Source of the DNA: Leucoraja ocellata
Taxonomy: Eukaryota
Direction: 5' to 3'
DNA length: 64,000 nucleotides
NCBI GenBank assembly: GCA_036785375.1
Contig: JAWMAR010000007.1
Coordinates: forward strand, 10,912,001 to 10,976,000
The notes under the pieces were generated by a model, which worked only from the letters and a program-made list of their open reading frames with translations, made no database searches and was not told the origin of the DNA. Every line of letters begins with the position of its first letter. Position 1 is the first letter of the stretch. Position numbers and translations under genes: made by a program. Shown one piece after another: positions 13,363 to 58,180 of the stretch.

Positions 13363-13398
13363 TCCGGGCCCACTCGTGCTCCACCAACCCCAACTCAC

Positions 13399-31097: not shown

Positions 31098-31155
31098 ATG
31101 GTGTCCCGCTCCCTCTTGGTCTTCTTGTTGCTGTTATCGGCGGTCGCTGTCTCCG
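31098..31155 (+). CDS. Signal-peptide exon of Siglec-15-like gene A
   Basis: aggATGG context, MVSRSLLVFLLLLSAVAVS + G, phase-1 donor GTATGT at 31156, in phase with the exon at 35177. Confidence 0.88.
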
Positions 31156-32898
31156 GTATGTCCCGTTCCCTTCTCTCCATCGCAGGCTAACGGCTGGGCT
31201 CGGTCCGGGTTAGGTCAACCGACCCACAAGACTAGGGGACCCTTGGCTAGCTACCTCTCTCTCTCTCTCTCTCTCTCTCTCAGACGCTCAACCATTTTAC
31301 AATCCTGTCATAGCGTTTTTCATTTAGAGGACTGTACCGAGTTCAATGTATTAGTAAACGCTGCAAACTTTCGGCGGCTTAAAAAGTGTGCCATGGGTCT
31401 GAAGAAGGGTCTCTACCCGAAACCTCACCTATTCATGTTCTCCAGAGATGCTGTCTGGCCTGCTGAGTTATTCCAGCACTTGGTGGCTTTTTTAAGAATT
31501 GTTATTGTTCAAGTGTCAGTCCCGTGGCAATTAAACACTGCATCACTGACCTCTCTTCGAGCCCCCCCCCCACCCCATCCCTTACTACCATCAGTGTGAA
31601 CAAGGGCCCTGACCCGAAATGTCACCTATCCACGTCTGCCAGCGATGCTGCCTGAGCCGCTGAGTTATACTACTTTAAACTCCTTTCAGATCTCACCTCA
31701 CCGCGTTTCCTATTCCTTCTGAGACAGGAAGGTAGACAGCGAAAATTATGTATCCTCTGGCTTTGGAGAGGTGAAAAACTAAGTTCAGTTGAGAAACAAG
31801 AATTCCAAAATTATGCATTGAAGGGATCAGACAGTCAGAACGTGTTTTTTTCCCCCAGGGTGGAAATATCAAATACTAGAGGTGAGAGGAACAAAGTTTA
31901 AAGGAGATGTGTGGGGCAAGTTTGTTTTACACTGAGGGTGATGAGTGCCTGGATCACACTGCTGGAGGTGGTGGTGGAGGTAGATGCGGTAGTGGTGGTT
32001 AAGATACTTTTTTTTTGACAGGATAGACACATGGATAGGCAGGGAGTGGAGGGATATGAATGATGTGCAGACAGATTAATTTAACACCAACATGTTCACC
32101 ACAGACATTGTTAGTATAAGGGCACGTTCCTGTGCTCTTCTGTTCTCTGTTAAAAGTGTTGTAGAATTCGAAGTCTCTCCCCTCTGTCATCTCCCTCTGT
32201 ATCTCTCTCTGCTTTTTGCTCATTATTGTCTTCCCTTTATGTCTCTCTTTTCTTTCTCTCTCCCGCTGTCTCCCCTTCATTCTCTCGTTTTTTCTCTGTC
32301 TCTGTTTATCCCCCTGTTTCTGTTTTTTTGTTTCTTTCTCTCTCTCTCTCTGTTTCTTTCCCCCGCTGTGCTGAAAGGGGGCTCAGCGGTGCTGTGCTTT
32401 TCTAGTGTTATGTGTTGTGTGTTCTAAGATCTAAATGGTTTGTGAGGGGAATTATGGTGAGAGCCGGAGGGAAAATCCTTTCCTCAAGAGAGTCGCTGGC
32501 CGAATGATTTCAGTCCCCCCGGGTGGGTGGTGATGATGTGGGTTGGAATTTGTGGGGGTTCCCGCCTGTACATACCTTGTGATAACTGACTCCCATTCAT
32601 TCACCGGGGCTGGCTGATGAGTAAAGTGCACTACATGTGGCGTCAGCTGTCCATCATGAGATCATCACAACTTCCCTTTGATTCATTCTTTCACTGTGTC
32701 GTTTATGACTCTTGTACAATGCGACAGCCCAGAAACAGACCCATTGACCTACCGAGTCCATGTTGTCCACATTGCCTATCTACAGTCAATCCTTTGCCGC
32801 CGAGAACAAACAGGGTCCACCGGGACTCTAATTAGTACTTTGTAACCTTGTTGGCACTGGATACGTGGTGACTATTTGCGCGCTATGTGTATTGTAGC

Positions 32899-33450
32899 AA
32901 TGTTACAACATTTTGAGATTAAAAAAATCAAGTCTTTAAGTTATCCCATCAGATAAAGCATAAAAAGAAGTTTAATTTGACACCTAATTCACTTTCATAT
33001 GGAGAGTCATGGAGTGATACAGTGTGGAAACGGCCCCTTCGGCCCAACTCGCCCACACCGGCCAACAATGTCCCAGCTACACTAGTCTCACTTCCCTGCG
33101 CTTAGTCCATAACCCCCAAAACTGTCCTATCCATGTAATTGTGTAACTGTTTCTTAAATGATGGGATAGTCCCAGCCTCAACTACCTCATCTGGCAGCTT
33201 GTTCCATTCACCCACTACTTTTGTGCAAAAAGGTTACCCCTCAGGTTCCTATTAAATCTTTTCCCCTTCACCTTGAACCTTGGTGCTCTGGTCTTCGATT
33301 CTCATACTCTGGGCAAAAGACTCTGTGCATCTATCCGATCTCTTCCTCTCACGATTTTGTATGTCTCTATAAGATCTCCCCTCATCCCCCTGCACTCCAT
33401 GGAATAGAGACCCAGCCTCCTCAACCTCTCCCTATAGATCACACCCTCTA

Positions 33451-33485
<35 letters not shown>

Positions 33486-34430
33486 CTGTATTAAAAAGGT
33501 TATGGCCATTTTCATACTCGGAAATAAGCATCTTGTTCCCTATTGATTTTTAATTGGCTTAACACAAAAGCTGTGATCGAGAACATTTAAAAGCCGATAA
33601 CTGTCTTAAAATTTAAGAGAACTGAAATAAATTTTCAGTTATTGTAGATTGATGCATTCTGAAACAAATATGAAACAATCATACTTAGATGAAATTAAAG
33701 CATATAATTAGTTAGTTGCCTAATTGTAGCTAATTACAAAATTCAATTACTAGATCTAAACATCTATCCATTTCTTAAGAATAGATTAACATTTTTAAAT
33801 AGCCTAAGTGTCCAAATAACATTCACACAAGAATTCAGAATATAACATAATTTTTAAATCTCATTGTCATGGGTTTATAGGCCAAATGGAAGGAATTTAA
33901 TGTTTAATACCTGTAAATTAATGGCCATTTAAATCAGCTTGCGAGTGGGGATTTTCTGGAACGGGACCATTTGGAACATTCAGGATGCGGTGAATTTAGT
34001 CCCCCATATCGGCAGCAAATACACTGCCAGTTCTTCGGGGAGAAAAATACCGTTTTGCAACATAAAATGTGAATTAAATACATCTTAAGAAACACTTTTA
34101 TACATTAAAAAAAACTACTTTCTTTTACCTGGTCCTCCATAAAATCCGTCCCAGTTGTCGGCATTGACGGCTTCAGAAGCTGATTTTAAAATCATTCCAG
34201 CGATTAACTTGTCGGGTGAATTTGTTTTTAAAACACACAGAATGGCTGTAGGAACAATTCTTTAGCACCATCTTGCACTCCAACAAAATGTAATTCAGGA
34301 AGGACCAGGTCGGAAAAAACCCCGTTTTAACCCCGCCCGTCCTCCCCCCCCCCCCCCTTAAACGCGCCCAAATCGCACACACGGCCAGTGGCAGAATTGC
34401 AGCGCCGCTGAAGGTAAGTTTTGTAACATA
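32899..34430. mobile_element. Non-autonomous DNA transposon of unassigned family, with a CR1 3' fragment inserted at ~33000-33452
   Basis: Short inverted ends atgttacaa ... ttgtaacat around an AT-rich non-coding interior. Confidence 0.4.
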
Positions 34431-35176
34431 CATATGTATTGTATGCACAAACAAAGAATTTCACTGTACCTTGGTACATGTGACAATAATGCATCATTGA
34501 TCTTGGTGCATTGGGCTCATACCGTTAAGATAAAGGGTGATTGTTTAGTTTAGTTTAGTGATACAGTGTGGAAACAGGCCCATTGGTCCACCAAGTCCAA
34601 CTCCAACGAGCTATCAAAGGTACGCTAGTTTTATCCCACATACTAGGGACAATTTACAGAAGGCAATTAACCTACAAGTCTTTTGAATATGCGAGAAACC
34701 TGGAGCACCCGGGAAAAACCCACGGGGTCACAGGTAGAATGTAAAAACTCCACACTGACAGCGTCCATAGTCAGGATCAAACTTGCGCTGTAAGGCAGAT
34801 CCTTCTTCAGACTTTGGCCCGCCAAGTCTGCGTCAACCAGCGATCACCCCGTACACTAGCACTATCCTACACAGCAGGGGCAATTTACAATTTCACCAAA
34901 GTGGTACGTCTTTGGAGTGTGGGAGGAAACCGGAGCACATGGAGAGTACCCACGCAGGTCACGGGTAAAACGTACAAACTTCATACAGACAGCACCCGTA
35001 GTCAGGATTGAACCCGGGTCTCTGGCACTGCCATGCAGCAAATCTACCACCGACCCCTATGTCGCCACTGGCATTGTATTCTCTTTTGCGTTGGAGGCTT
35101 TTGATTTCCAGACGGATTTGATACAGTGATGTAGATTGTCGGATAGACCATTCTTTGACTCTCTCTCTTCCCGCAG

Positions 35177-35584
35177 GAGGCGTGGGGGAGCCGGTGGCCG
35201 TGTTAGTGCATGTCCGGGACAGGGTGACCAGTACTGTCGGAAGCTCCGTGGTATTGCCCTGCAATTTCAAATCCGACTACTCCGACTACACGACCATGGA
35301 CATTACTGTCATCTGGAAGGTGAAGGTGTTTTACACCGGCTCGGTGTTGTTCAACGTGACCAACAGGAGCAATGGCGGCAAGGACTTCGTGGACGAAGTT
35401 CACACAAATGTCAATGGCCGCTACAAACTGGCCGGGGACCCGAGGCAGAAGGTCGCCTCGCTGGAGGTGGAGAATGTTACACTGGGTGACAGCGATCAAT
35501 ACTTCTGCCGCGTCGAAATCAAACGCCAGGGATTACGCGCGTTCATGCACGAGTCCAACCCTGGAGTCACCCTGGAAATTATAG
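35177..35584 (+). CDS. Ig V-set exon, Siglec-15-like gene A
   Basis: ctcttcccgcAG acceptor, 408 nt, phase 1-1, GTAAAA donor. VVLPCNF...VIW...GRYKLAGDPRQKVASLEVENVTLGDSDQYFCRVE...HESNPGVTLEI parallels recalled Siglec-15 VLPCTF...AIW...GRFRLLGNPRRNDLSL...YFCRVE...YESRHGVRL. Confidence 0.9.
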
Positions 35585-37771
35585 GTAAAAACCACAAGCA
35601 CCGCTCAGTTTACCACTGTCTCTGTCAGTTGATCTCTCCCCTCTATTTATTGCTTTTGTCTCTCCTCTTGTCAGTCTCTCTGTTGGTCCCTCTCTCTATT
35701 TCTGTTGTATTGTCCCCATCCTCTTTTCGCTCTCTCTTACCCTTTCTTATACTGCTCCTATAAGTCTCTCCTGCTTTCAGACTCGCTTTCCTATCTGTGT
35801 AAGAAGGAATTGCATAAGACATACGATTAGAAGTAGGCCATTCGGCCCATCCGGTCTACTGCGCCATTCAATCATAACATTGACCATGTGGGTTTTCTCC
35901 GGATGCTCCTACCACACTCCAAAGATGTGCCACTTTGGTTAAATTGTAAATTGTCCATGGTATGTTTTTCCCTCTCAACCTCATTCTCCTGCCTTCGCCA
36001 TAAAACCTCTGATGCCCTTCCTAATCAAGAAGCTATCAATCAGCTACCCAATGACTTGGCCTCCACAAGCAATGAATTCCACAGATTCACCACCGTCTGG
36101 CTAAAGACAGTGGTGCATGTGACAATAAATGTGAATTTGAACTTGAACTTCAACTTGAAGAAGTTCCACCTCACCTCCATCCTAAAGGTACCACTTTTTA
36201 TTCTGAGGCTGTGTCCTCTGGTTCTGGCCTCTCCCCTTATTGGAAACATCCATTCCATGTCCACTCTATCTAGGAATTTCATTATATGTTAGATATCAAT
36301 GAGGCACCACCTCACCCTTCTAAAAATCCAGCAAGTACAGGCCCAAAGTCTTTAAAGGCTCCACATGAGCTCCTCAAAGCTGAGAATGGAAAGAACGCTT
36401 CCTCCACCATCAGACATTAGTGATCTAGACTGAGTTCATCAACAATCCATTTGTTTCATGGTCATAAATGGCTTTTTAGTCCAGATTTAATTAATTAACA
36501 ATTTCAATTTCTCAGCAGCCAGGGTGATGTTGAACTAATGTCAATAGAGCCAGTGAAGACAGGGGGCTGGAGTAGCTCAGCGGGTCAGGCAGCATCTGTG
36601 GAGAACATCACAGGAGGGAGCCGTGAGAGAAGGAATCACAGAACTGTTGGATAGAGGAGGAGAATGTCTTCAAAGTAGGCATACCCCGAGGAGATTTCAC
36701 AGTGGAGCAGTGAAGTATAGAAATAAGGAGTTGCAGATGCTGGTTTACAAAAGAAGACACAGATCACTGGAGTAAATCCCTAAGTCAGACGGTCTGACCC
36801 GCTGAGCCATTGCAACACTGTCTCTCAGTAGAGCAAGTCTCTGATCCTTTGCTTCTGCATCAGTGATGTCCACCTCAGTGATTTCCCCCGTCTTGTATCT
36901 GGTCACTCACACAGGAATGCTTGTGGTTCCATAACCTTATCAATATATGGAATAGGAATACTTTATTGTTACATGTGACCAGGCACAGTGAGAATCTTTG
37001 CTGCATAACCAATGAATGTAAATACACTGACAAAGTTACAAAGCATGCCGGCTCCTCCAAAAGGATGGGGTGAAAGGTGAGGACTAGGGGGACACTGTCC
37101 CTGTTGCGAATGGGGGGGGAGGGGGAGCAAGAGTGGAGCTGCGGGATAACGAAGAGACACATGTGATGGCCTCGTCTATGATGGAAGAGGAGAATCCCTG
37201 TTCCCTGAAGAATGAGGACCTCGGATGTCCTGGTATGGAACACCTCATCTTGGGCACAGATGCGACATAGACAGAGGAATTGGATAGAGTCTTTGGAGGA
37301 GGCAGGGTGGGAAGAAGTGTAGTTCAGATCGTTGTGGGAGATGGTGGGTTTATAATAGATGTCAGTCGACTGTCTGGCTCCAGTAATGGAGACGGTGAGA
37401 TCGAGAAAGGGGAGGGAGGTCAGAGATAACTACCAGCACGTTCCATACACCCACCTCCCTCTGTGTACATAAGTTGCCCCTCAGGTTCCTATTAAATCAT
37501 TCCCCTCTAACCTTAAACTGATGGTGGATGAGGCATCAGTTGTATGCTGCATCTGCCACACTTCTATGCTGAAGTGTCAGCCTCAATAATGAGCTTAATT
37601 CTCTTGTGTTCTGTAACTTCCCTTTCTTTGAGCTCTAGTTTTGGTCACTTGCTTGTTCCCACATCCACGGGTTCCTGTTTAATATACCAACCCCATCACA
37701 GAACATTGCAATTTGTTTATGCAATTTGCTGGCAACTTCCTTTAACCTTTGCTTTGTTTCTATGTTCCCAG

Positions 37772-37785
37772 GCTCACCCATCATC
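37772..37785 (+). CDS. Probable start of the next (C2-set) exon of gene A, cut off by the assembly gap
   Basis: Strong pyrimidine tract ctttgctttgtttctatgttcccAG. Phase-1 join gives ...LEIIG-SPII, comparable to Siglec-15 ...LHVT-AAPRI. Only 14 nt visible. Confidence 0.55.
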
Positions 37786-37985
37786 NNNNNNNNNNNNNNN
37801 NNNNNNNNNNNNNNNNNNNNNNNNNNNNNNNNNNNNNNNNNNNNNNNNNNNNNNNNNNNNNNNNNNNNNNNNNNNNNNNNNNNNNNNNNNNNNNNNNNNN
37901 NNNNNNNNNNNNNNNNNNNNNNNNNNNNNNNNNNNNNNNNNNNNNNNNNNNNNNNNNNNNNNNNNNNNNNNNNNNNNNNNNNNNN
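37786..37985. other. Assembly gap (200 N)
   Basis: Run of N; the round size suggests a placeholder of unknown true length. Confidence 0.99.
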
Positions 37986-38184
37986 TGGCGTGATCCTTGA
38001 TGGCTCTTTGGGAATGGTGCGATTGTAATGTATAGTCTTTCCACTGACTGGTCAGCACGCAACAAAAGCTTTGCACTGTACATCGGTACACCTGCCAATA
38101 AATTGAAACTGGTGGTCGGCAAGGATAAGGTGGGCCAAAGGGCTTGTTTCCGTGCTGTATAGCGCTATGATCCTTCTTATTTAG

Positions 38185-38212
38185 ATGGTTATGTGTCCTC
38201 ACCACTGACGGG
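38185..38212 (+). CDS. Candidate 28-nt cytoplasmic-tail micro-exon
   Basis: ccttcttatttAG acceptor, (x)GYVSSPLT(G), phase 1 to 2, weaker donor GTGGGA; phase fits the exon at 38341. Confidence 0.35.
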
Positions 38213-38340
38213 GTGGGAGTTGACCAACTGTGGGTTATATGAGCCCAAAATAGCACTGGGTTCGGGGTGATGGGGGATGAGTGAGCTGCAGTGTTAGTTA
38301 TCACAGTTGTCTAACTCAATCTCTTGCTATCCTCCCACAG

Positions 38341-38405
38341 GGCCCAGCGCAGTTCGCAGCAGTATTCAACAGTTAGCTTGTGCCAGCAGCAGCAAATACC
38401 ATTAG
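38341..38405 (+). CDS. Candidate cytoplasmic-tail exon
   Basis: Branch point CTAAC (38311) plus ctatcctcccacAG acceptor; AQRSSQQYSTVSLCQQQQIPL, phase 2 to 1; donor AG|GTAACT. Confidence 0.55.
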
Positions 38406-38798
38406 GTAACTGGGCCATCAATGGAACCACCGGAACTGGGGCAGAAACTACAGGGGCGGAAACTACAGGGACAATATTTGGCTGGGATGCGTGCGGGCAA
38501 TTGCGAGGCGAGGGTAGTGCACTCGAGAGATTTCCAAAGAAGGGGCGGATTGCGGACGGGAGTTCCCGGGTGGGGGGCACAATAAGTCCGTGAGATTTAG
38601 GGTGGACTGACCAGGGCTCTTGTTGGTTTTGTGTGTTCCAGTGGGAGTAGGTTGGTTGGGACTTTGGGACTCGGTGGCAGAGGTGGGACCGGAGCTGAAG
38701 TTCAGGGGTGTCGGGGGCAAGGGGGAGGTGGGTGGGTGGGGTGTGGTGATCGCTGCTGGGCTCAAGATGTTGATCTGAAATGAACGCCTCTCTTTCAG

Positions 38799-38860
38799 TG
38801 GTGCCCTGCGCGTCAGTGCAGGATACTGAGGGCAGCGATAAAGTACCAGAGGCTGGCACC
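38799..38860 (+). CDS. Candidate cytoplasmic-tail exon
   Basis: cctctctttcAG acceptor, (V)VPCASVQDTEGSDKVPEAGT, phase 1 to 0, donor GTGAGT; frame-compatible with 38341-38405. Confidence 0.55.
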
Positions 38861-38939
38861 GTGAGTTAACACAGCAGCAGAGAAACACAGCTCGGAACCC
38901 ACTTCATCGGACAGACTCACTTTCAGAACAAACGGTCTT

Positions 38940-39530
38940 GTGTGAGTCTGAGTGTGTGTGTGTGTGTGTGTGGGGCCACTGAGTGTTTGAGTGATGAGCG
39001 TACGGGCGAGAGGTTGTGATTGTGTGAATACAACTGAGTGTGTGTCTGTATGTCACTGTGTGTATGTGTTAGTGTGTCTAAATGTGTGTGTAGGTGAGGA
39101 GTGTGTTTGTGCGGAGTGTGTGTTTTTACCAGCATTTGCGTCAGTGTGCGTGAGAGATGGGAGAGAGAGAGAGTGAGAGAGTGAAAATATTCCAAGGAGT
39201 GTGTTTACCAGTGCATGTGTATGTGTAGCAACAAGGAACTGCAGATGCCAGTTTACCAAGGAAAGACACAAAGTGCTGGAGTAACTCAGCAGGCCAGGAA
39301 GCATCTGTGGAGAATATGGACAGGTGACGTGTGTCTGAGTGAGAGGGTCATTGTGTTTACTGACAAACACCATGTACAGTGTGTGTCAATGTGTATGTAT
39401 GTGTATCTGTCAGTGAGAGTGTTTACTGTGTCAGACTGTGTTAGTCTGTCTGTGCGTAAGTAAGTGTGTGCGTGCCAGTGAGTGTTTACGGGTGGGAATG
39501 CTGGTGTGTGTAAGTTTGAGTGTGTGGAAA
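38940..39530. repeat. Degenerate (TG)n-rich region
   Basis: Many interrupted tgtg runs. Confidence 0.8.
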
Positions 39531-40859
39531 TGCAGTGAGTGCCCGGGATGAATTGCTGCCTTTAAAGATTCCGCCGATGTGTCCAGCACACAGGGAGGCT
39601 TGGAGCGACAACGCATGCTCCCGTGTGCTCCGCTCCCCGCTTCAGCCGCCTGCTCTCAGTGTCGCATGGACAAGGAAGCACAAATCTGCAGCGCCGAAGG
39701 TCGACGGGATCAGCAGCCCCTGGTACCGGTGGGAAGACGCCGGCGAGCCTTCAGACTGTGGGGTCGTGCCCCCTTGTGCAGCGGGGCAGGGCTGGAGGTC
39801 ATGAAGGGCTGTTCTAATCTATCATGTTCTATGTTCTAATCTAATCAGGCGCTCTAATCTATCAACATACGACAGTCCCGGCATCCTGGGAATTAACCTT
39901 GTGAACTCCCTCAATAGCAAGAATAGGGCTCAGGGCTTCAGTTCTGAAGGTAATACACTGGGCTGCAGGCAGTCAATGGTTCATTATTACCATCATGTGG
40001 TGTCAAGGTGCAGTGACATTCTTTTTTTGCATATAGATTAGTAACCATATACCCACACATAAGTAAAATCCCCGATTACTCACATAATGCATGGAATCAG
40101 CCCACATAGCCCGTATGCAAGAGTTGCCAGGTTTTGGCGCTACTTTCAAAGTCCCAGCTGCAGCTGGCCATAAAGGCCTGTTGCAGCTGTCGCCTCCATC
40201 CAGCTAGTCCAGAAAACCATCGCCCCTCTCCTCGCCCAGCCATCTTTAACCTTTATGGCCCAAGGGGGCATCTCCCGCAGTCGACCTTATGGGCGCGGAA
40301 GGTAAGATCCCCCCTCCCCCAGTTCTTTTACTGGCCCTTTTTCCAGCATCCGCCACGTTGCCGTCCTTCCACCCTCCTCTACGCTTCCCGGTCTTCGGGG
40401 GCGAACGGGAGATGAGCCTTCCACTCTAGGCTGGGTTTCACGATCCCGCGGCAGGCGAACCAGGCCCCGCAGCCTGCTAGGGTACGGCAGCAGAACCATC
40501 AAAGCAGCCTTCCAAAGACATGGGAGTTAGCAGGTTAATCAGCATCTGTAAATTGTCCCTCGTGAACAGGGTGATCGCTGGTCAGTGCTGACTCGGTGGG
40601 CCGAAGGGCCTGTTTTCACACTGTATTTCTAAACTAAACGTAACCACTACATGGGTATCAACGCAGGGCTACACAGGGACCCAATCGCCATGTGATGGCA
40701 TCGACAGAGCTAGGTTTGGGGGGGATGAGTTGAGATGCAGATTCACCATGGTCTGGTCACTCCAGCAGCCCAGATTCCCCCAGCCTCGGTGGACATTCCC
40801 GCCAGTCGCTGGATGCTTTGCAACCACCAGTGGAATTGCTGCTTTGGGATTCATCATAA

Positions 40860-41484
40860 AGGCCCTGTCCCACTTAAGTGACCCTGGCACGCAAATTACG
40901 CGACCTTGTCGTCACGTTGAGGCGCACGGGCAACGTATGGCCGCGCGGGGCCGGTCCCACTGAGAAGCGCGGAGGGGTATGGAGTTGTGCGGGGTACCGC
41001 GCGGCGCTCCGAAATTTTGTGGCGAACAAAATCTTCGCTCGCCACCGGCCTGATGCGTAACTAACGGCCAAAGTGGGACAGGCCCATCACCCTGGCGCGA
41101 TGCAAACTCAGCCTGCGGCTCACGGCCATTGCGGATCCGGATCCGCCCCTACCCCTACTACCAGAGCGGGGCCAAGAAAATTGAAGATAGACACAGAATG
41201 CAGGAGTAACTCAGTGGGACCCGCAGCATCTCTGGAGAGAAGGAATGGGTGACGTTTCGGGTCAGACTGAAGAAGAGTTTCGACACGAAACATCACCCAT
41301 TGCTTTTCTCCAGAGATGCTGCCGGTCCCGCTGAGTTACTCCTGCATTATGTGTCCAGCTTCAACTGACGTCATGCGCTCCAGACGGCTGTGTGGGCGCA
41401 TGAAGTCGCGCGGGGCTGTCACGCCTCAACGCGACCACGAGGTCATGTAATTAGCGTGCCAAGGACACGTAAGTGGGACGGGAT
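40860..41484. mobile_element. Harbinger-derived non-autonomous element containing a palindromic Penelope-type insert (~41185-41360)
   Basis: Long imperfect TIRs (gtcccactta..tggcacgcaaattac / gtaattagcgtgcca..taagtgggac), TAA flanks; right end matches the end at ~49230-49277. Confidence 0.75.
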
Positions 41485-42770: not shown

Positions 42771-44565
42771 CTGTCCTGTGATTCACAGTGGAGGATTTAT
42801 CCACTACAGTGTAATGCACAGTTGCACTTTAAACTCGTTGCACTCACTGCCCACTTTACTGAGTGAATGCATTGCTGCCGGGAATGGGTCATGCCAGAGT
42901 ATCGTTGTTATGTCAACAATCATTGGTTAACATAAATAAAGAATGCTATTGGTTCACACTGTGTAAAACATTAACCGATATGTAAAGGCGAGTTAGTACT
43001 AAAAGACACGCGAAGAGAAGGAAATTACACTTTTTTTGAGGAATCAGCACACTATGGATGCTGGTTTACTAAAAGAACACAGTGCTGGAGTAAGCAAGTC
43101 AGGCAGCATCTCTGGTGAACACGGATAGATGACGTTTCAGGTTGGGAACCATCTTCAGACTGATTGGTGTGGGTGTGGGTAGACGGTAGGCGGCGCGACT
43201 CTCGTCAGCAGCGGCCTCTGCAGCCCGTCTGCGTTTTTATTATTTTTTGTCTATGTTTTTATGTAGTTTTTGTTATTTTTTGTTGGGGTATGTGTCTGGG
43301 GGGGTTGGGGTGGGGTGGGAGGGAGGGGGTAACCTTTAATCTCTCCCTTCACGGGAGACCCGACCTTTTCTTTGTCGGGTCTCCGTTGTCGTTGGGGCTG
43401 CAACGAGGAGTGGCCTCCAACAGGAAGACCGGGGGCTCTGGTGCCGACGCGTCGCGGAGCTGGTCGAGTCCAGAGCGGGTGTAGCGGTGGTGGGGCGCTG
43501 CTGCTGCTGCGGCCCGACCTCCGGAGATTCGGAGGCTGCAACTGCGGGTCTGGCGGACGGCAGCACTGGGAGCCCGCGGGTCCCTGGAGGGAGACCGCTT
43601 TTCAGGGCTCTCGCAACGGCCACTTCTCCCGCCCGAGTTGCGGGGTCGAAGAGCTCCTGGAGCGGGGCCTGACATCACCGCCCCGCGCGGCTTGGAATGG
43701 CCGCGGGACTCTGCGAGCGCACGCCGGGGGCTCTAACATCAAGAACCCGGCGTGCGACCTTGCATCACCCGGCGTGGCTTTAATGGTCGCGGGACAATCG
43801 CCATCGCCAGCCGGGGGCTTTGTCTTTGACTCTGACATGAGGGGGGGGGGGGGGGGGGAGAGTGCAGTGGAGAGATAAGTTTATTTGGCCTTCCATCACA
43901 GCAATGTGATGGATGTTTATGTAAATTATGTTGTGTCTTGGGTCTATTTGTTTGTAATGTTTGGCTGCAGAAACGTCATTTCGTTTGGACCTCAAGGGGT
44001 CCAAATGACAAACAAATTGTATCATGTATCTTGTATCTTGTGTGGGTGGGAGAGAAAGCTGGAAGGGCAGGATAAAGAGGCAGGATAAGTATGGTAAGCG
44101 AGACAAAGTGCCGGTGAAACTCAGCAGGTCAGACAGCATCTCTGGAGAACATGGACAGATAATGTTTCAGGTCGGGACATTTTTTTCAGACCGAAACGTC
44201 ACCTATCCATGAATTCCAGCGATACTACCTGACTTACTCCAGTACTTGGGTCCTTTTTGCGTATTCACGAGATTTGCAGTTCTTTGTTTCTACACCTGGT
44301 AAATGAGAGGTGGATACAGGTGAGAGGTCGGGTTCATTGACAGGTGGGTATAAGTGACAATGGCTAGAGAGGAAAAGGAAACAATAGGATGGCAGATGAG
44401 GAGAGAAGAAAAGTGCAACGTGAAGCCAGAGGAAGGGATGTATGTGGAAGGGGACGGTGGGTGGAAATGGGAAATATGTGTGCGCACTGGGATAGGGCAA
44501 AGAGAGGGTAAAAAGAGGGGTGGGGGGGGGTGTTAGCTAAAATTGGAGAATTCACGATTCATACC

Positions 44566-45395: not shown

Positions 45396-47320
45396 GTTCC
45401 CTCCTTGATCTCTATGATCAACACATAGTAAGAAAGGATTTTAATATTTTCTCTCATTAATCAGTTGCAAAAATGGAGGCATACATGTCCGATTATAATT
45501 TTGGTTGGAACCCGTCCTTGAGCAAGCAAAGAGATACCTCTTTGTACATGCAAAGGGATATGAGCACACACCAAACATTCTAATCAGATAAGGAAGCTTG
45601 TTTTTCTTATAGCAGCAAGTTCACTGTGTTCTGTGAGGAAGTTGTTTGTAGGATTTCATACTGCAACAAACTTTCTACCCTCCTCATATTTCTTGCAACT
45701 ATCAGGATGCCTCACTTCTCCGTCATATCCTCTCTGATCCCACACGGTGTTAGTATATTCATAAGAATTCGATTCTACTAAGATAGTTAATAACACTTTT
45801 TTTTATCACTACAAAGTATTACGGTTCTTGTGTTTTCTTCTCTTCGAGGGTTCCGTCTGAGTGATGCAGTTTACATCTGGTGACATGTACCCAATCAGGT
45901 TTTTCTTTTACTTTTACTGCTATTCTTAATAGCAGCACCAAATATGGTCCTTTCCATCTAGAGGAGGGAGAATCTTTACTCATTGCTCGCACATAAACCT
46001 GATCTCCTGGTTTAAACGGGTGCATATTTCCTTCTGTTTTTATTTTTATTTGTTGTGTATGTGTGTGGGTGTGTGTGTGGGGGGCGGGGGGTGGGGGAAA
46101 CTTTTAAAATCTATCCCCTGCACGGAGAACCCGGCCATTTCCCTGTCGGGTCTCCGTTGTCATTGGGGCCTAGCACCGTGGAGCGACCTCCAGCAGGAAC
46201 GACCTGGGGCTGCAGTCGCGGAGCCTGCGGACCTACTCACCATCATGGAGCTGGCCGAGTTCGGAGCGGGAGGAGCGGTGGTGGCGCGCTGCTGCATTCC
46301 GACCCCGGGGATTCAGAGACTTACCGCAGGTCTGGTGGACGGTGACACCGGAGCCCGCGGGTCCCTGCTGGGAGACCGCTTTTCGGGGCTTCCGCAACGG
46401 CGACTTCACCCGCCCGAGTTGCGGGGTTGAAGAGTACCTGGAGCGGGGCCTTACATCATCGCCCGGCGTGGCTTGGAATGTCTGTGGGACTTTGCTAGTG
46501 CCCGCCGGGGGCTCCAACAACAAGACCCGGAACGTGGCCTTGCATCGCCCGGCGTGGCTTTAATGGCCGCGGGAGAATTGCCATCGCCCACCGGGGGCTT
46601 TGACTTTGACTCTGACATTGGGAGAGGAATGGGAAGTGCAGGGGAGAGATAGGTTTTTGCCTTCCATCACAGCGAGGAGGAGATGCGCTGTGATGGATGT
46701 CTGTGTAAATTGTGTTGTGTCTTGGTTCTTTCTTGTGTGTATGACTGCAGAAACAACATTTCGTTTGAACCTCAATGGGGTTCAAATGACAAATAAATTG
46801 TATTGTATTGTATTGTATTCTGCCGGAAGGACCTGCGCCTGCTTAACCTTCTCATAGATTTTACCACCTGTTTCACTCATGGCTTGAGCATATTTTAAGG
46901 ATTTTTCATCATTCCAAATTAGGACTACCTTCTCAGGAGTCATCGAGGGTCGGGTTCCTCTTGTCATAGGTCATCCCATCAAAATCTTGTGAGGTATTAG
47001 GCCCGTGTTTCTATTTTTCTGATTTCTCAGGGCATACATCGCTATGGGCATGGTGTCTGGCCACAACAACCTATTTGGCATACTTTAGCCAAAGTTGCTT
47101 TTTCCCCTCCATTTACTCTTTCTACCATCCCTGAGGGCTATGGTTGATATGGTATGTGTAATTTCCACTGGAACCCAAGAGCCTTCGACAAGTTCTGAAC
47201 CAATTTACTGGTGAAATGAGTTCCTCTGTCACTGTTTATTCCCATGGATATCCCGAATCTAGGTATTATTTCTTTCATTTAAAATATTGACTACCGGCCT
47301 TACATCATCCCTTTTTGTGG
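45396..47320 (-). pseudogene. ERV (class I/epsilon-like) pol integrase remnant, interrupted at ~46030-46820
   Basis: IIPRFG...NSDRGTHFT...SGMVERVNG integrase core (~47110-47275) and GPY/F module HPFKPGDQVYV...RWKGPYLVLL...DWVHVTRCK (45819-46025). Confidence 0.85.
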
Positions 47321-47329
47321 GGTGTGTAG

Positions 47330-51103: not shown

Positions 51104-52515
51104 ACAATGCATTCAGAAAGTATTCAGACCCCTTCACTTTTTCCACATTTTGTTACGTTACAGCCTTATTCTAAAATGGATTAAATTCATTTTTTTATCA
51201 TCAATCTACATAAAATACCCCATAATTAAAAAGCGAAAACAGGTGTTTAGAAATTTTTGCAAAGTAATTAAAAATAAATAACTGAAATATCACATAAACA
51301 TAAGTATTCAGACCCTTTACTCAGTATTTTGTTGAGGCACCTTTGGCAGAGATTACAGCCTCAAGTCTTCTTGGGTATGACGCTACAAGCTTGGCACACC
51401 TGTGTTTGGATAATTTCTCCCATTCTTCTCTGCAGATCCTCTCAAGCTGTCAGGTTGGATGGGTAGCGTCGATTCACAGCTATTTTCAGGTCCCTCCTGA
51501 GATGTTCGATCGGGTTCAAGTCCGGGCTCTGGTAGGGCCACTCAAGGATATTCACAGACTTGTCACAAAGCCACTCCTGCATTGTCTTGTCTGTGTGCTT
51601 AGGGTCATTGTCCTGTTAGAAGGTGAACCTCTGCCCCAGTCTGAGGTCCAGAACGCTCTGGAGCAGGTTTTCATCAAGGATCACTCTGTACTTTGCTCCG
51701 TTCATATTTCTCTCGATCCTGACTAGTCTGCCAGTTCCTGCCACTGAAAAACATCCCCACAGCATGATGCTGCCACCACGTTTCACCGCAGGTATGGTAT
51801 TGGCCAGGTGATGAGCGGTGCCTGGTTTCCTCCAGACGTAGCACCTGGCATTCAGCCCAAAGAGTTCAATCTTGGTTTCATCAGACCAGAGAATCTTGTT
51901 TCTCATGGTCTGAGAGTCCCTTAGGTGCCTTTTGACAAACTCCAAGTGGGCTGTCATGTGCCCTTTACTGAGGAGTGGCTTCCATCTGGCCACTCTACGA
52001 TAAAGGCCAGATTGGTACAGTGCTGCAGATATAGTTGTCCTTCTGGAAGGTTCTCCCATCTCCGCAGAGGAACTCTGGAGCTCTGTCAGGGTGACCATCG
52101 GATTCTCAGTCACCTCCCTGACCAAGGCCCTTCTCCCCCGATTGCTCAGTTTGGCCGAGCGGCCAGTTCTACGAAGAGTCCTGGTGGTTCCAAAATTCTT
52201 CAATTGAAGAATGACAGAGGCCACTGTGCTCTTCGGTACCTGCAATGCTGCAGAAATTGTTTTATACCCTTCCCCAGATCTGTGTCTCAACACAATCCAG
52301 TCTCGGAGGTCTACGGACAATTCCTTCGTCTTCAGGGCTTGGTTTTTGCTCTGACATGCACTGGCAACTGTGGGACCTTATATAGACAAGTGTGTGTACC
52401 TTTCTATATCATGTCCAATTTAATTTACCACTAGGGGACTCCAATCAAGTTGTAGAATCATCTCATGGATAATCATTGGAAACAGGATGAACCTAAGCTC
52501 AATTTTGAGTGTCAT
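51104..52515 (-). mobile_element. Tc1 transposon (Sleeping Beauty/Tdr1-like group), one end lost
   Basis: ORF 51616-52320 with GEGYKTISAALQVPKSTV, ILWSDETKIELFG, GGSIMLWGCF; TIR ta|caatgcattcagaaagtattcagacc with an internal direct repeat at ~51303. Confidence 0.93.
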
Positions 52516-52916
52516 AGGGGATGTCAGGGTTCTGTCAGACCCGCTGAATTACTCCAGCACTTTGTGTGCTGCACAAGATCCTAGCATCTGCAATTTATTG
52601 TCTGAGAAGCTCTCAGAACTGTTTTTATATGTTTAATCCTTTGTTATATAATGCTTTTGTTATAAACAGGGAACCATCTTGCTTGTTCCTTCCTGGTCTA
52701 CTTTCTGAGAATTTTGCAAAATTAAAAAATGAAGATATCAGTGAAGTACGGTGTTGATTTGAAATGTTGCTGGTGTATTTTGCAATGCACCAGAAACAGC
52801 TCAGCAGCCAGAGGAAACCACAACATTCAGAGAACTGCAGGAAGCAGCAAGGAGTCTTGGTTCCACCGAGCCAAAGAGAACGCCAGTGGCATCTGAGAGC
52901 TCTATGAGAGAGGAGA

Positions 52917-52965
52917 ATGCTGTTCATTCTGCTTTGCACCATTGCCCTGCCTATCTCCGCTACTC
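52917..52965 (+). CDS. Signal-peptide exon of Siglec-15-like gene B
   Basis: agaATG, MLFILLCTIALPISAT + C, phase-1 donor GTAAGT at 52966; joins 57797 as ...SAT-R-CSSSGWSM. Confidence 0.82.
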
Positions 52966-56140: not shown

Positions 56141-57796
56141 CATACTAACCATGGAGCACATTAACCCCACGTTAGCTCAACATCAGTGTCCCAGATCAAT
56201 CGGTTATTTAGTCCAGTGTTTATTGAATCTTACTGTTCAAACTTTGTCTTCTCCATTTTCCACATTTGAATCAGAGATTCCCAAGGTCTACAAGTCCCCT
56301 TTTGCTGGCACCGGTAATAACAGTTTCTACATTCACATAACTTCACATAACCGAGAGAAGGTGAAGAGAAGATTTATGAGGATGTTGCTAGAACCTGAGT
56401 GCCTGAGCTAGAGGGAAAGGTTTGGCAAGCTACAACTTTATTCCTTGGAGTGCAGAATAAAGTGATCTTATAGAGGTGTATAAAATCATGGGGAATATAT
56501 AATGTGAATGTTTGGGCACACACGTGGTCACAGGGAGAATGTACAAACTCCGTACAGACAGCAGCCGTGGGGAGGATCGAACCAAGGTCTCTGGCATTGT
56601 AAGGCAGATCCCAAAGTAATTCTTGATAACCATTTTGACTGTCTATGTTATGAGCAATTTTTAAGTCATTAGCAAACTTATTAATCATTCAAATTGATAT
56701 AGATGACACATAGCAAATGGCCTATCAACAATCCCTGAGACACACCACTAGCTACAGGTCTAACTGGCTACTGGTGGATCATGTTAACCTGATCTGTTTA
56801 GATCTCGTGCAATCTAACCTACTATGCGGAACCTTGTCAAAGGCGTTTCTGAAGACCAAATAGATTACATCTACGACCCAGCCCTCATCAACCTTGATTA
56901 CCTCTTCAAAAAACTCAATCACATTCATGAGACATGATCTCCCATGCACAAAACGATGTGACTGTCCCTAATCAACCCTTATCTTTCCAAGTGGGTGTTT
57001 GTCTAATTCCTCAGAATCTACACCAGTGACGATGTTAGGCACATTTCCAAGGTGTTTCTTTGCAGCCCTTCTTAAGTAGAGGCACAAAATTAAGCAACCT
57101 CTAGTCTTCCTACCCTAACCCAATATTATTCTCCACATATTTCCCTCGATTCCCAGTTCAAACGACCCACATATACACGAGCGGCAACATACAATGGTCA
57201 ATTAAATAAAAATGCATGTCTTTGGGATGTTAGAAACGGCATACGAAGGAGAAAGCCCATGCAATCATACATAAAATATGCAAACCACACACAGTACCGA
57301 AGGTCAGGAGTAAACTCTGGTTCATGGAGTTGTGATTCAGCAGATTGACTAGCTGCTCCACTGTGCCAGCTGTGGAAACCAATGACTTGCGGTCAGGTAC
57401 TTCCTTGGTGAGATCTTTCTGTGCACTACTTGCCTGTGGCATTCCCAACGCTATTTCACCGCCAACACTTCAAACCTGTGAAGCTCTGTGGACCACCCCC
57501 TGTCTGTGAGGGAAGTGATGTAAATGCAAGGTTTCTCCCGGACAGCAGCTTAGAGCTGTGAGAGATGTGGCTCCAGTGAAGAGCCAGCACAGCCCGGAGG
57601 AGGGGAACCACTGTTAGTGTCACAGTCCCACCTCCCCATTTCTCACAGCTCACCACATAGTGACGGTGACAAACAGCACAGCAGCATCACAGTTCAACTG
57701 TCTTCCACAAGGGCAGGGACCCAGGGTGGGCGCAGCCTCCTACAGTGACTGTGGCCCTCAGTTCAGTCTTAACGTTACATCTCTATGTCTTCACAG

Positions 57797-58180
57797 GCTG
57801 CAGTAGCAGTGGTTGGTCCATGGAGACACCAGACGAGGTGATGGGGACGGAGGGGAAGCTCGTGGTTCTGTACTGCAAGTTCACTCACCCTCACCATGAA
57901 TACAAAGGCAACATCAACATCATCTGGAGTGAGTGGCAGACCAAGAAGACCCTTTTCAAATACAAAAATTATCAATCGAGCGGCACGTATAAAAATGAGA
58001 TCGTGGATAATGTAGGCGCTCGCTACAGACCAATGGGGGACCCTCGGAAGAACGATGCTTCCATAATCATTAATCAGCTGAGAACGACGGATACAAACAA
58101 GATCCTCAACTGTCGTGTTGCGCTCACGGGGCAAACAGGGGCAACGTTTGGATGCCCACATGGGCGAATCACAGCATCAG
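57797..58180 (+). CDS. Ig V-set exon, Siglec-15-like gene B
   Basis: gtcttcacAG acceptor, 384 nt, phase 1-1, GTGAGG donor. WSMETPDEV...VLYCKFTHPHHEYKG.I..IW...RYRPMGDPRKNDAS...CRV...HG closely follows recalled Siglec-15 WSMQVPPEV...VLPCTFTHPHRHYDG.L.AIW...RFRLLGNPRRNDLS...CRV...HG. Confidence 0.92.

What the first reader, a model, noticed from the sequence alone, without database searches (positions are those of the whole stretch)
31098..58180. Tandem cluster of divergent Siglec-15-like receptors next to uba6
Seen: two same-strand genes, each a phase-1 leader exon plus a V-set exon with Siglec-15 hallmarks (B-to-F strand Cys pair, RY/F-x-x-x-G-D/N-P-R, C-R-V with the sialic-acid-binding Arg position). 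By eye they share only roughly a quarter to a third of residues, and both lack the extra inter-strand Cys pair of Siglec-15. Known: SIGLEC15 is normally single-copy in mammals and lies by EPG5/SLC14A1, while human UBA6 is flanked by STAP1 and GNRHR/TMPRSS11. Inference: an old, lineage-specific, diversified Siglec-15-related lectin/immune receptor family at a non-canonical locus in cartilaginous fish, possibly extending past the window and possibly forming paired activating/inhibitory receptors.
Basis: partly seen in the sequence, partly recalled or inferred. Interest (0 to 1): 0.82.

Follow-up and report, generated by a model that had tools for sequence, protein, structure and literature searches.

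The report
Two Siglec-15-family receptor genes beside uba6
The window from a skate-like genome holds one Siglec-15-type immune receptor gene, interrupted by an assembly gap, and the first two exons of a second, very different relative, both belonging to a large shark-and-ray receptor family that gene-prediction pipelines have listed but that I found described in no paper.

Summary
Two same-strand genes each have a phase-1 leader exon and an intact V-set exon. Gene 1: 31098-31156 and 35177-35585. Gene 2: 52917-52965 and 57797-58180. Human Siglec-15 is the best solved-structure match for both V domains, by sequence and by predicted fold. Both keep the Arg aligned with Siglec-15's sialic-acid Arg and lack its extra Cys pair. 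They are 28.6% identical. One spliced uba6 exon lies at 7778-7872 on the minus strand.

Gene 1 belongs to a one-per-species elasmobranch group that NCBI names siglec-15 (96% to Amblyraja radiata). Its C2 and TM exons are absent from the read letters. The N gap lies where they should be. Its orthologs have no mid-membrane Lys but a tail tyrosine.

Gene 2 is the start of a VA-VB(n)-C2-TM family found in sharks, rays and chimaera. That family has Lys/Arg-TM forms and Tyr-tail forms. V-domain trees cannot say which gene, if either, is the Siglec-15 ortholog.

RNA evidence is very thin. The scan's other first-stage notes place further family exons just beyond this window.

The parts
31098..31156 (+). 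Gene 1 leader exon (MVSRSLLVFLLLLSAVAVS + 1 base, phase 1). An in-frame upstream ATG at 31047 is an alternative start.
   Evidence: Sequence read. tblastn of A. radiata P0114 residues 4-50 hits 31011-31157 at 90%. Orthologs in other species start at the position of 31098.
35177..35585 (+). Gene 1 V-set exon (phase 1 at both ends), with the B and F strand Cys, GRYKLAGDPR, and FCRVE carrying the Siglec-15-type Arg.
   Evidence: It is 96% identical to A. radiata 'siglec-15'. AlphaFold model pLDDT is 93.3; the best PDB fold match is 7zoz_A Siglec-15 at TM 0.84/0.90 and rmsd 1.6.
37786..37985 (.). Assembly gap (200 N) inside gene 1. It lies in the interval where the C2 and TM exons (P0114 residues 187-321) are expected and are not found.
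   Evidence: One search gives the N run. Searches find no match to the C2 or TM parts anywhere in 35586-57796. The gap was not filled or looked up.
38341..38405 (+). Gene 1 cytoplasmic exon ((R)AQRSSQQYSTVSLCQQQQIPL), holding the single conserved tail tyrosine.
   Evidence: Acceptor ag at 38339-38340, donor gt at 38406-38407. It matches P0114 residues about 322-344.
38799..38869 (+). Gene 1 last coding exon (VVPCASVQDTEGSDKVPEAGTVS, stop TAA at 38867-38869).
   Evidence: 16 of 16 residues are identical to the C-terminus of P0114. The window's frame runs 8 codons further than the A. radiata protein.
52917..52965 (+). Gene 2 leader exon (MLFILLCTIALPISAT + 1 base, phase 1, donor GTAAGT).
   Evidence: It is 70% identical to the leader in A. 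radiata P0007 residues 354-373 and 56% to Rhinoraja P0183 residues 252-283.
57797..58180 (+). Gene 2 first V-set exon, type VA (WSMETPD..FTHPH..ARYRPMGDPR..NCRVA). The rest of the gene lies beyond the window.
   Evidence: It is 83-84% identical to three A. radiata paralogs and 76% to L. erinacea P0171. Model pLDDT is 95.5; the best PDB fold match is 7zoz_A at TM 0.85/0.87 and rmsd 1.9.
7778..7872 (-). uba6 exon (equivalent of human UBA6 residues 44-78), head-to-head with gene 1 and about 23 kb from its ATG.
   Evidence: UBA6 chains at E 2.3e-11, UBA1 chains at 1e-5 to 1e-4; splice sites.

Best explanation
The window holds two separate members of a Siglec-15-derived receptor family of cartilaginous fishes, lying head-to-head with the 5' end of uba6.

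Gene 1 (31098 to 38869) is the skate member of a one-per-species elasmobranch group. Its build is signal peptide, one V-set domain, one C2-set domain, an uncharged transmembrane helix and a roughly 50-residue tail with one conserved tyrosine. In this assembly the C2 and TM exons are missing from the read letters. The 200-N gap sits where they belong.

Gene 2 (from 52917) is represented only by its leader and its first V exon. Its relatives continue with one to three further V domains (type VB, with His where Siglec-15 has Arg). After these come a C2 domain, a TM helix and a tail.

Mechanism, inferred and not shown. The N-terminal V of each protein presents the F-strand Arg that in human Siglec-15 (R143) is needed for sialic-acid binding. 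Both are therefore most likely sialoglycan-recognising surface receptors of immune cells. Gene 1 probably signals through its own tail tyrosine and not through DAP12, because its orthologs have no mid-membrane Lys. Gene 2, judged by its nearest full-length relatives (uncharged TM, LIYSIV-type motifs), is more likely an inhibitory form. Arg-TM and Lys-TM activating forms exist in the same family, so this is open.
For: Siglec-15 likeness:
- By phmmer against PDB, the best hit for both V domains is 7zoz_A Siglec-15, at E 1.3e-12 and 2.7e-14. The next hits are at 7e-07 and 5.6e-06.
- By Foldseek on AlphaFold models, 7zoz_A ranks first at E 1e-11 (gene 2) and 1.3e-11 (gene 1), TM 0.84-0.90. The next hits are at 2e-07 (gene 2) and 1.4e-08 (gene 1).

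Separate genes:
- Each gene has its own ATG and signal-peptide exon.
- Gene 1 has its own terminal exons with a stop at 38867-38869, upstream of gene 2's leader.

Gene 1 group:
- It is 96% identical to A. radiata siglec-15 and 58-70% to single proteins of eight other elasmobranch species (Pristis, Mobula, Hypanus, Pristiophorus, Heptranchias, Carcharodon and two Scyliorhinus).
- These form a clade of 9 rows with support 100/99.
- In the C2-TM part, gene-1-type proteins score somewhat higher against bony-vertebrate Siglec-15 than gene-2-type proteins do. Examples: Latimeria 69-72 against 46-60 bits; frog 54-76 against 51-60 bits.

Gene 2 group:
- Of 116 representative proteins at E up to 1e-3, the top ones are multi-V proteins.
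- The VA clade has 11 rows (99/98) and the VB clade 15 rows (98/95). Both include Callorhinchus.

Arg column:
- Gene-1 type 9 of 9; VA 11 of 14; VB 0 of 12; bony vertebrates 31 of 34.

TM and tails:
- Gene-1 type: no charged residue in the helix in 8 of 8. A tail motif fits [SIVLT]xYxx[IVL] in 5 of 8.
- Gene-2 family: nine elasmobranch proteins plus Callorhinchus P0013 have Lys in the TM and a tail of 4-19 residues.
- P0171, P0183, P0170/P0010, P0008 and P0121 have an uncharged TM and tyrosine-rich tails. Four Rhinoraja proteins have Arg in the TM.

Linkage:
- Gene-1-type and gene-2-type proteins come from contigs of identical length in 7 of 7 species where both were returned with a contig length. 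One of these is a 141,275-bp S. torazame scaffold with consecutive gene ids.
Against: - Gene 1 cannot be shown to be intact here. 135 residues of the ortholog (C2 and TM) have no counterpart in the read letters, and I did not look into the gap.
- RNA support is very thin. In 4 RNA runs the V exon had depth 0 in two and 0.19-0.89 in two. No splice joint of the gene reached the listing threshold, and almost all laid reads were repeats.
- The species label of those runs is coded and not verified.
- Gene 2's TM and tail are outside the window, so its signalling type is extrapolated.
- The window's own tail motif (QQYSTV) does not fit the ITIM pattern.
- Orthology to Siglec-15 is unresolved. The four clades form an open polytomy (90/78). 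AU tests reject neither gene 1 + bony (p 0.44) nor gene 1 + VA (p 0.31). VA + bony stands in the best tree at support 28/6.
- All comparison proteins are pipeline predictions. Some are clearly chimeric, for example P0007 and P0008.
- The structure models were built with alignments that contained Siglec-15 orthologs, which may pull them towards that fold.
- No sialic-acid binding has been measured. By the passage of PMC7226832 that I read, cloned zebrafish Siglec-15 bound tested glycans poorly.
Confidence: 0.8

Rival explanations
1. Gene 1 is simply the skate SIGLEC15 ortholog and nothing more unusual. Gene 2 is a later chondrichthyan offshoot. The finding then reduces to a normally annotated gene plus a paralog.
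For: NCBI names the gene-1 group siglec-15 in seven elasmobranch species. It has the same V-C2-TM layout as Siglec-15. Its C2-TM similarity to bony-vertebrate Siglec-15 is slightly higher than that of the gene-2 type. The AU test does not reject gene 1 + bony as one clade (p 0.44).
Against: The best tree instead joins VA with the bony clade, though at support 28/6. The gene-1 type lacks two Siglec-15 features that other chondrichthyan relatives keep. One is the mid-membrane Lys, present in the gene-2-family K forms in a P-L-I-K-F-L-L-L context like bird and Latimeria Siglec-15. The other is the extra Cys pair, present in 10 of 10 'type C' first V domains. No gene-1-type protein from Callorhinchus was returned.
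Confidence: 0.35
2. One or both loci are non-functional in this genome. Gene 1 would have lost its C2 and TM exons, so the gap hides nothing relevant. Gene 2's V exon would be a fossil cassette like those the scan's other notes describe just downstream.
For: The C2 and TM exons are absent from the read letters. RNA depth is near zero. The family shows rapid duplication and chimeric or partial models. First-stage notes s1-885036 and s1-885395 speak of fossil exons nearby; these are unchecked.
Against: All found exons of both genes are open and have canonical splice sites. Gene 1's V is 96% identical, and its last exon 16 of 16 identical, to an annotated A. radiata protein. Both V domains keep the invariant Cys, Trp, Gly and Arg positions. 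The few RNA reads lie on the exons only and on one strand: bins 35200-35599, 38200-38399 and 38800-38999, against 0 to 0.03 in neighbouring intron bins. A direct V-to-tail splice would shift the frame, so the gene needs the missing exons to make the conserved tail.
Confidence: 0.15
3. The two V exons are alternative first cassettes of one long transcription unit and not two genes.
For: First-stage note s1-884664 proposes interchangeable V exons feeding one C2-TM exon just beyond the window (unchecked). NCBI models such as P0007 run across neighbouring units.
Against: Gene 1 has its own conserved tail exons and a stop codon between the two V exons. Gene 1's group is a V-C2-TM protein in nine species, without VA or VB domains. 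Each V has its own leader with an ATG.
Confidence: 0.05

Closest known systems
Siglec-15 (human/mouse SIGLEC15; structure 7zoz)
   Same: It is the best sequence and fold match for both V domains. Shared features are the canonical B-F disulfide, the RY/F-x-x-x-G-D/N-P-R motif, the Arg in C-R-V at the place of human R143, and, in gene 1's orthologs, the V-C2-TM order. The role of R143 and of the TM Lys is taken from passages of PMC7226832.
   Different: There is no extra Cys pair between the B and F strands. Gene 1's orthologs have no mid-membrane Lys and carry a conserved tail tyrosine instead. Gene 2's family has two to four V domains, the later ones without the Arg. Identity to human Siglec-15 is only about 30%. 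Orthology is unresolved. The gene is many-copy here, not single-copy.
CD33-related Siglecs of mammals (rapidly evolving, clustered, paired inhibitory and activating forms such as Siglec-5/14; the pairing is recalled, not from a call)
   Same: A clustered multigene family on one chromosome. An N-terminal Arg-bearing V domain. ITIM/ITSM-like tails in some members and charged-TM short-tail forms in others. Loss of the Arg in some members: Leu in 8 of 8 elasmobranch K-TM forms.
   Different: The V domains are not of the CD33 type. CD33 and Siglec-5/7/8/10 chains are much weaker hits, at E 1e-5 or worse. The disulfide pattern is B-F. The extra domains are V-set and not C2-set. The family is rooted in the Siglec-15 branch.
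PILR alpha/beta (paired immunoglobulin-like type 2 receptors)
   Same: A single sialic-acid-dependent V-set with an Arg, and paired inhibitory and activating forms. PILRA chains are among the next fold hits for gene 1's V, at E 1.5e-08 and TM 0.73.
   Different: The hits are clearly weaker than Siglec-15: E 1.3e-11, TM 0.84-0.90 for Siglec-15 against sequence E 2e-4 for PILRA. PILR has no C2 domain.
Multi-V Siglec-15 relatives of bony vertebrates (lungfish LOC122808572 with 7 V; salamander 'siglec-12'; gar SIG15; characiform proteins)
   Same: Tandem Siglec-15-type V domains, then C2 and TM, with either Lys-TM or ITIM-like tails.
   Different: Their V domains fall inside the bony-vertebrate clade. 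The repeated V domains are near-copies of one another that keep the Arg and the extra Cys pair. They are not a distinct Arg-less VB type. These look like independent duplications.

Membership tests
Siglec-15 (orthologs of SIGLEC15) | N-terminal V-set domain closest to Siglec-15 among known structures | tested here: met
   phmmer against PDB gives 7zoz_A first for both, at E 1.3e-12 and 2.7e-14, with a margin of 5 to 8 orders of magnitude. Foldseek gives 7zoz_A first at TM 0.84-0.90.
Siglec-15 (orthologs of SIGLEC15) | Arg on strand F needed for sialic-acid binding (human R143) | tested here: met
   FCRVE (gene 1) and NCRVA (gene 2) align with the RYFCRVE of 7zoz_A. Column counts: gene-1 type 9 of 9, VA 11 of 14, bony 31 of 34. 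That R143 is essential is taken from passages of PMC7226832.
Siglec-15 (orthologs of SIGLEC15) | Extra Cys pair between strands B and F of the V domain | tested here: not met
   There are 0 Cys between the B and F Cys in both window domains, in 9 of 9 gene-1-type rows and in 11 of 14 VA rows. There are 2 in 31 of 34 bony-vertebrate rows.
Siglec-15 (orthologs of SIGLEC15) | One C2-set domain after the V domain | tested here: inconclusive
   It is present in gene 1's orthologs (P0114 and others). No C2 exon is found in the window's read letters, and the N gap lies in that interval. Gene 2's downstream exons are outside the window.
Siglec-15 (orthologs of SIGLEC15) | Lys within the transmembrane helix (DAP12/DAP10 coupling) | tested here: not met
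   This holds for gene 1's group only. 8 of 8 orthologs have an uncharged helix; in sharks a Lys or Arg sits at its outer edge, and in rays it is replaced. The window's own TM exon is unread. For gene 2 the feature is not testable in the window; its family has Lys, Arg and uncharged TM forms.
Siglec-15 (orthologs of SIGLEC15) | Orthology by phylogeny | tested here: inconclusive
   In the careful V-domain tree of 73 rows, the gene-1, VA, VB and bony clades are each supported, but their order is an open polytomy. AU tests reject none of the three groupings tried.
Siglec-15 (orthologs of SIGLEC15) | Conserved neighbourhood (EPG5/SLC14A in mammals, recalled) | not tested
No other tool gives eukaryotic gene context. 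The scan's notes hold no entry for epg5 or uba6.
Siglec-15 (orthologs of SIGLEC15) | Sialic-acid-dependent ligand binding | not testable with these tools
   This needs Fc-fusion glycan binding with Arg mutants.
Paired activating/inhibitory receptor family | Members with near-identical ectodomains but either a charged TM with a short tail or an uncharged TM with ITIM-like tyrosines | tested here: met
   This is met at family level only. Callorhinchus P0013 (Lys-TM, 19-residue tail) and P0121 (VIYSVV, VIYAVV) are in one 90% cluster. Rhinoraja P0183 (LIYSIV, SLYSNV) stands against P0189, P0194 and P0195 (Arg in TM). For the window's gene 2 the TM is out of view.
PILR | V-set closest to PILR alpha/beta | tested here: not met
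   PILRA chains score E 2.2e-4 by sequence for gene 1 and are absent from gene 2's list. The fold E is 1.5e-08, against 1.3e-11 for Siglec-15.

The most novel reading that the evidence does not exclude
In cartilaginous fishes the Siglec-15 branch, not a CD33-like branch, was expanded into a chromosomal cluster of rapidly duplicating receptors. The expansion predates the chimaera-elasmobranch split.

The cluster would consist of three parts:
- A conserved single-V gene with a tyrosine tail (gene 1).
- A conserved Lys-TM gene whose first V has lost the sialic-acid Arg.
- A variable set of multi-V genes that keep the Arg at the tip and carry ITIM-like tails or an Arg-TM (gene 2's kind).

This would be a convergent counterpart of the mammalian CD33-related Siglec cluster. 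The uba6-linked position might be the family's ancestral home, from which tetrapod SIGLEC15 moved.
Probability: 0.4. Interest if true: 0.62.

Novelty: new variant of a known kind. Interest (0 to 1): 0.45.

Why it matters
Siglec-15 is treated as a conserved, single-copy, DAP12-coupled receptor, of interest in bone biology and as a tumour immune checkpoint.

Suppose the shark and ray relatives are real, expressed receptors. They would then show that the same V-domain scaffold was used very differently early in jawed-vertebrate history:
- as a tyrosine-tail receptor without the TM lysine;
- as the tip of multi-V receptors with activating and inhibitory versions.

That gives comparative immunologists three things:
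- a natural series of Arg-keeping and Arg-losing domains to test what Siglec-15-type domains bind;
- a second example, beside the CD33-related Siglecs, of a glycan-receptor family evolving as paired receptors;
- markers for myeloid-type cells in cartilaginous fishes.

For this assembly, it also flags that the gap at 37786-37985 probably hides at least two coding exons.

Tried and rejected
C2 and TM exons of gene 1. I searched 35586-57796 with tblastn (word size 2, E up to 1000), using the C2, TM and tail parts of P0002, P0003, P0004 and P0114. Only chance-level hits came back. I conclude the exons are not in the read letters.

More uba6 exons. A screen of minus-strand open frames with short generic E1 motifs found nothing. 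uba6 exon 1 was not identified. The CpG-island-like stretch at 13001-14000 and its open frame had no Pfam hit.

Synteny with uba6 or epg5 in other species therefore stayed untested.

RNA evidence. No run on record as RNA held the V exon. Four raw-read RNA runs with the same species label were laid on 35000-40999. They gave mostly repeat-derived reads, only a handful of reads on gene 1's exons, and no joint or loose end at the exon borders. The test of the gap by reads was uninformative.

Orthology. The V-domain trees and AU tests did not resolve which chondrichthyan clade is sister to bony Siglec-15. Rows dropped between the 109-row and the 73-row tree were long-branch or redundant rows, listed in the script. 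Mammalian fragment proteins were never put into a tree.

Rejected readings. PILR, CD33-type Siglecs, CAR/MPZ and other V-sets are much weaker hits. 'One gene with alternative V cassettes' is rejected because gene 1 has its own tail and stop.

Literature. Searches for Siglec-15 with cartilaginous (7 papers), with shark (15), Siglec with Callorhinchus (4), with elasmobranch (6), and a five-term fish-evolution search listed no paper on this family in cartilaginous fishes. For these I saw search listings only. Of PMC7226832 I read the found passages, not the whole text. They might hold gene lists that bear on the claim of 'not in print'.

The suggested extra disulfide of gene 2 (N-terminal Cys to FGCPHG) is therefore untested.

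Full report
What is in the sequence

Two genes lie on the + strand.

Gene 1 starts with a leader exon at 31098-31156. It reads MVSRSLLVFLLLLSAVAVS plus one base, with donor GT. Its V exon is 35177-35585, with acceptor cag and donor gtaaa.

Gene 2 starts with a leader exon at 52917-52965. It reads MLFILLCTIALPISAT plus one base, with donor GTAAGT. Its V exon is 57797-58180.

- Both V translations pass Pfam's V-set threshold.
- tblastn with 20 or more family proteins found no other V exon in the window.
- The two V domains share 36 of 126 aligned positions, 28.6%.

The uba6 claim

A minus-strand exon at 7778-7872 has a polypyrimidine tract, a cag acceptor and a gtaagt donor. It matches human UBA6 residues 44-78 at E 2.3e-11. 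UBA1 chains score 1e-5 to 1e-4.

I recognised no second uba6 exon in the window. The rest of the gene presumably lies beyond the window's start. uba6 and gene 1 are head-to-head, about 23 kb apart, with no N between them.

The gap

The only N run is 37786-37985. It lies inside gene 1.

The A. radiata ortholog P0114 (360 aa) maps onto the window as follows:
- Residues 4-50 map to 31011-31157.
- Residues 49-186 map to 35173-35586.
- The tail maps to 38341-38405 and 38799-38842 (16 of 16 identical).
- All these pieces lie on the same strand and in the right order.

Residues 187-321, the C2 domain and the TM helix, match nothing in 35586-57796, even at very permissive settings.

Four points follow:
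- Both sides of the gap belong to one gene, which argues against a false join.
- No exon is cut by the N run, so no reading frame crosses it.
- At least 405 coding bases plus intron are unaccounted for. That cannot fit in 200 bases, so the written length is an underestimate or the exons are lost.
- A direct splice from 35585 (phase 1) to 38341 (which needs two bases from the exon before) would shift the frame and meet TAG at 38403-38405.

The reads test was uninformative.

What the domains are

By sequence against all PDB chains, human Siglec-15 (7zoz) is first for both. For gene 1 it scores E 1.3e-12, with the next hit, MPZ, at 7e-07. For gene 2 it scores E 2.7e-14, with the next hit, CD33, at 5.6e-06.

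AlphaFold models were built with alignments of 44 and 46 family proteins. Their mean pLDDT is 95.5 and 93.3. By Foldseek they again put 7zoz_A first:
- Gene 2: TM 0.85/0.87, rmsd 1.9, with the next hit at E 2e-07.
- Gene 1: TM 0.84/0.90, rmsd 1.6, with the next hits (Nav beta2, PILRA) at about 1.5e-08.

The Arg of FCRVE and NCRVA aligns with the Arg in RYFCRVE of Siglec-15. By the passages of PMC7226832 that I read, this is R143, whose change to Ala abolishes sialic-acid binding.

Neither domain has the Cys pair that 31 of 34 bony-vertebrate rows carry between strands B and F. Gene 2 has two other extra Cys, at its N-terminus and in FGCPHG. Both are present in the A. radiata protein that covers both positions (P0007), and both are absent in sharks and chimaera.

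Gene 1's relatives

- A search with the A. radiata protein returned one gene-1-type protein each from Pristis, Mobula birostris, Hypanus, Pristiophorus, Heptranchias, Carcharodon and two Scyliorhinus species, at 58-70% identity.
- These proteins are V-C2-TM-tail.
- In 8 of 8 the 21-residue helix is uncharged. Sharks have a Lys or Arg at its outer edge, and rays have lost it.
- The tail holds one conserved Tyr, which fits [SIVLT]xYxx[IVL] in 5 of 8.
- The window's tail reads ..SQQYSTV.., which does not fit that pattern.

This differs from Siglec-15. Its mid-membrane Lys couples to DAP12/DAP10 (PMC7226832, passages). That Lys is visible in the golden-mole, bird, Latimeria and lungfish proteins in my set.

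Gene 2's relatives

A full scan of 1.84 billion representatives gave 116 proteins at E up to 1e-3. The top ones are multi-V proteins:
- lungfish, 7 V domains;
- A. radiata LOC116971578 (VA + 3 VB + C2) and LOC116971575 (a chimeric model);
- proteins of Mobula, Heptranchias, Narcine and Callorhinchus.

The window's VA is 83-84% identical to three A. radiata paralogs. It is 76% identical to L. erinacea P0171 and 51% to the conserved Lys-TM gene of L. erinacea.

A profile search listed 43 family proteins from 18 chondrichthyan species. At least ten of them are on one Rhinoraja contig.

TM and tail types:
- Nine elasmobranch proteins share an almost invariant Lys-bearing TM and a tail of 4-9 residues. 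Their first V has Leu in place of the Arg, in 8 of 8 with that domain present.
- Callorhinchus P0013 has a Lys-TM and keeps the Arg.
- P0171, P0183, P0010/P0170, P0008 and P0121 have uncharged helices and tyrosine-rich tails with motifs such as LIYSIV, ILYSSV and VIYSVV.
- Four Rhinoraja proteins have Arg in the helix.
- Callorhinchus P0013 and P0121 fall in one 90%-identity cluster. This is the signature of paired receptors.

The second and later V domains (VB) have His at the Arg position in 10 of 12 rows and Arg in none.

Phylogeny

A careful IQ-TREE run was made on 73 V domains and 128 columns. It gives:
- the gene-1 clade, 9 rows, support 100/99;
- the VA clade, 11 rows, 99/98;
- the VB clade, 15 rows, 98/95, including the second V of a third 'type C' group;
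- a bony-vertebrate Siglec-15 clade, 28 rows, 94/89.

The order of these clades is unresolved. AU tests do not reject gene 1 + bony (p 0.44) or gene 1 + VA (p 0.31). VA + bony is in the best tree at support 28/6.

The C2-TM parts of gene-1-type proteins score a little higher against bony Siglec-15 than those of the gene-2 type. In contrast, the Lys-TM motif is kept in the gene-2 family, and the extra Cys pair is kept in type C first V domains (10 of 10).

I therefore do not name either window gene 'the' ortholog. The multi-V proteins of lungfish, salamanders, gar and characiforms fall inside the bony clade and look like independent duplications.

Linkage

Gene-1-type and gene-2-type proteins come from contigs of identical length in A. 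radiata, Pristis, M. birostris, Hypanus, Heptranchias, S. canicula and S. torazame. That is 7 of 7 species where both were returned with a contig length.

In S. torazame the two are consecutive gene ids on a 141,275-bp scaffold. This is indirect, but it fits an old tandem arrangement like the one in the window.

Whether uba6 flanks the cluster elsewhere, and what lies beside epg5, could not be tested.

Expression

No indexed RNA run held gene 1's V exon. In four raw-read RNA runs with the same species label:
- the exon bins had depth 0 in two runs and 0.19-0.89 in the other two;
- those reads were all in the first-mate-on-minus orientation;
- the neighbouring intron bins had 0 to 0.03;
- no joint reached the listing threshold.

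This is compatible with low expression from the + strand, but it is not proof. Gene 2 was not tested.

Earlier notes of this scan

Unchecked first-stage notes place further family exons 2.7-7.6 kb beyond the window's end. These are three V exons, a C2-TM exon and fossil TM exons with a TM Arg codon. The notes also place a four-V inhibitory-type gene 60 kb further on, and a V-V-TM(Lys) cluster on another piece.

My results from other species' proteins fit these descriptions: Arg-less VB domains, Arg-TM forms, four-V Tyr-tail proteins and type C proteins. I could not read that DNA. The scan has thus noted this family several times in this genome.

Verdict

The finding is a part of a large family that pipelines have annotated and that appears undescribed in print, judged by five searches seen as listings only.

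It is a new variant of a known kind: Siglec-15-type V domains on a tyrosine-tail receptor and on multi-V paired receptors.

Open points are the integrity of gene 1 across the gap, expression, gene 2's signalling type, orthology, and the meaning of the uba6 neighbourhood.

Noticed in passing
window 12985-14052 (-) and 13001-14000: A CpG-island-like stretch (GC 0.56-0.61, CpG o/e about 0.67) holds a 356-codon Gly/Glu/Arg-rich open frame with no Pfam match. It lies upstream of the uba6 exon on uba6's strand, so it could be the uba6 promoter or first exon.
   Followed up: partly
window 43266-43999, 46036-46779, 22576-22843: A CpG-rich repeat of about 750 bp occurs in two copies 76.5% alike between the two receptor genes. 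A partial third copy (73%) lies between uba6 and gene 1.
   Followed up: partly
window 51619-52320 (-): A Tc1/Sleeping-Beauty-type transposase remnant (HTH_Tnp_Tc3_2 at E 2e-18, HTH_SB at 7e-18) lies 600 bp upstream of gene 2's leader exon.
   Followed up: yes
window 61585-63951 (-): A LINE element with a reverse transcriptase (RVT_1 at E 3e-31) and an endonuclease part fills much of the stretch after gene 2's V exon. No C2 or TM exon of gene 2 was seen in 58181-64000.
   Followed up: yes
window 38403-38405 and 38840-38869: Two codon differences from A. radiata affect gene 1's ends. The normal frame runs 8 codons past the A. radiata stop (..GSDKVPEAGTVS*). The shifted frame used by A. radiata's TM-less isoform X3 meets TAG here, where A. 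radiata must have CAG.
   Followed up: partly
related proteins P0177, P0178, P0173, P0174, P0175, P0176, P0185, P0188, P0014: A Lys-TM member of gene 2's family has a nearly invariant TM and a tail of 4-9 residues in nine elasmobranch species. Its first V has Leu at the sialic-acid Arg position, in 8 of 8 with that domain present. The Tyr-tail relatives keep the Arg.
   Followed up: partly
related proteins P0025, P0027, P0032, P0058, P0060 ('type C'): A third chondrichthyan group is built V-V-TM without a C2 domain. Its first V keeps the bony-type extra Cys pair (10 of 10) and mostly keeps the Arg (7 of 10). It has Lys-TM forms (Rhinoraja P0058) and ITIM-tail forms (Leucoraja P0025). It sits on the same contigs as gene 2's family in six species.
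   Followed up: partly
window 35800-36800 and 39200-39400: There is very high RNA read depth (up to about 220) with many mismatches, and apparent 'joints' between 36600 and 39267. These are copies of an expressed repeat family and not splicing of gene 1.
   Followed up: no
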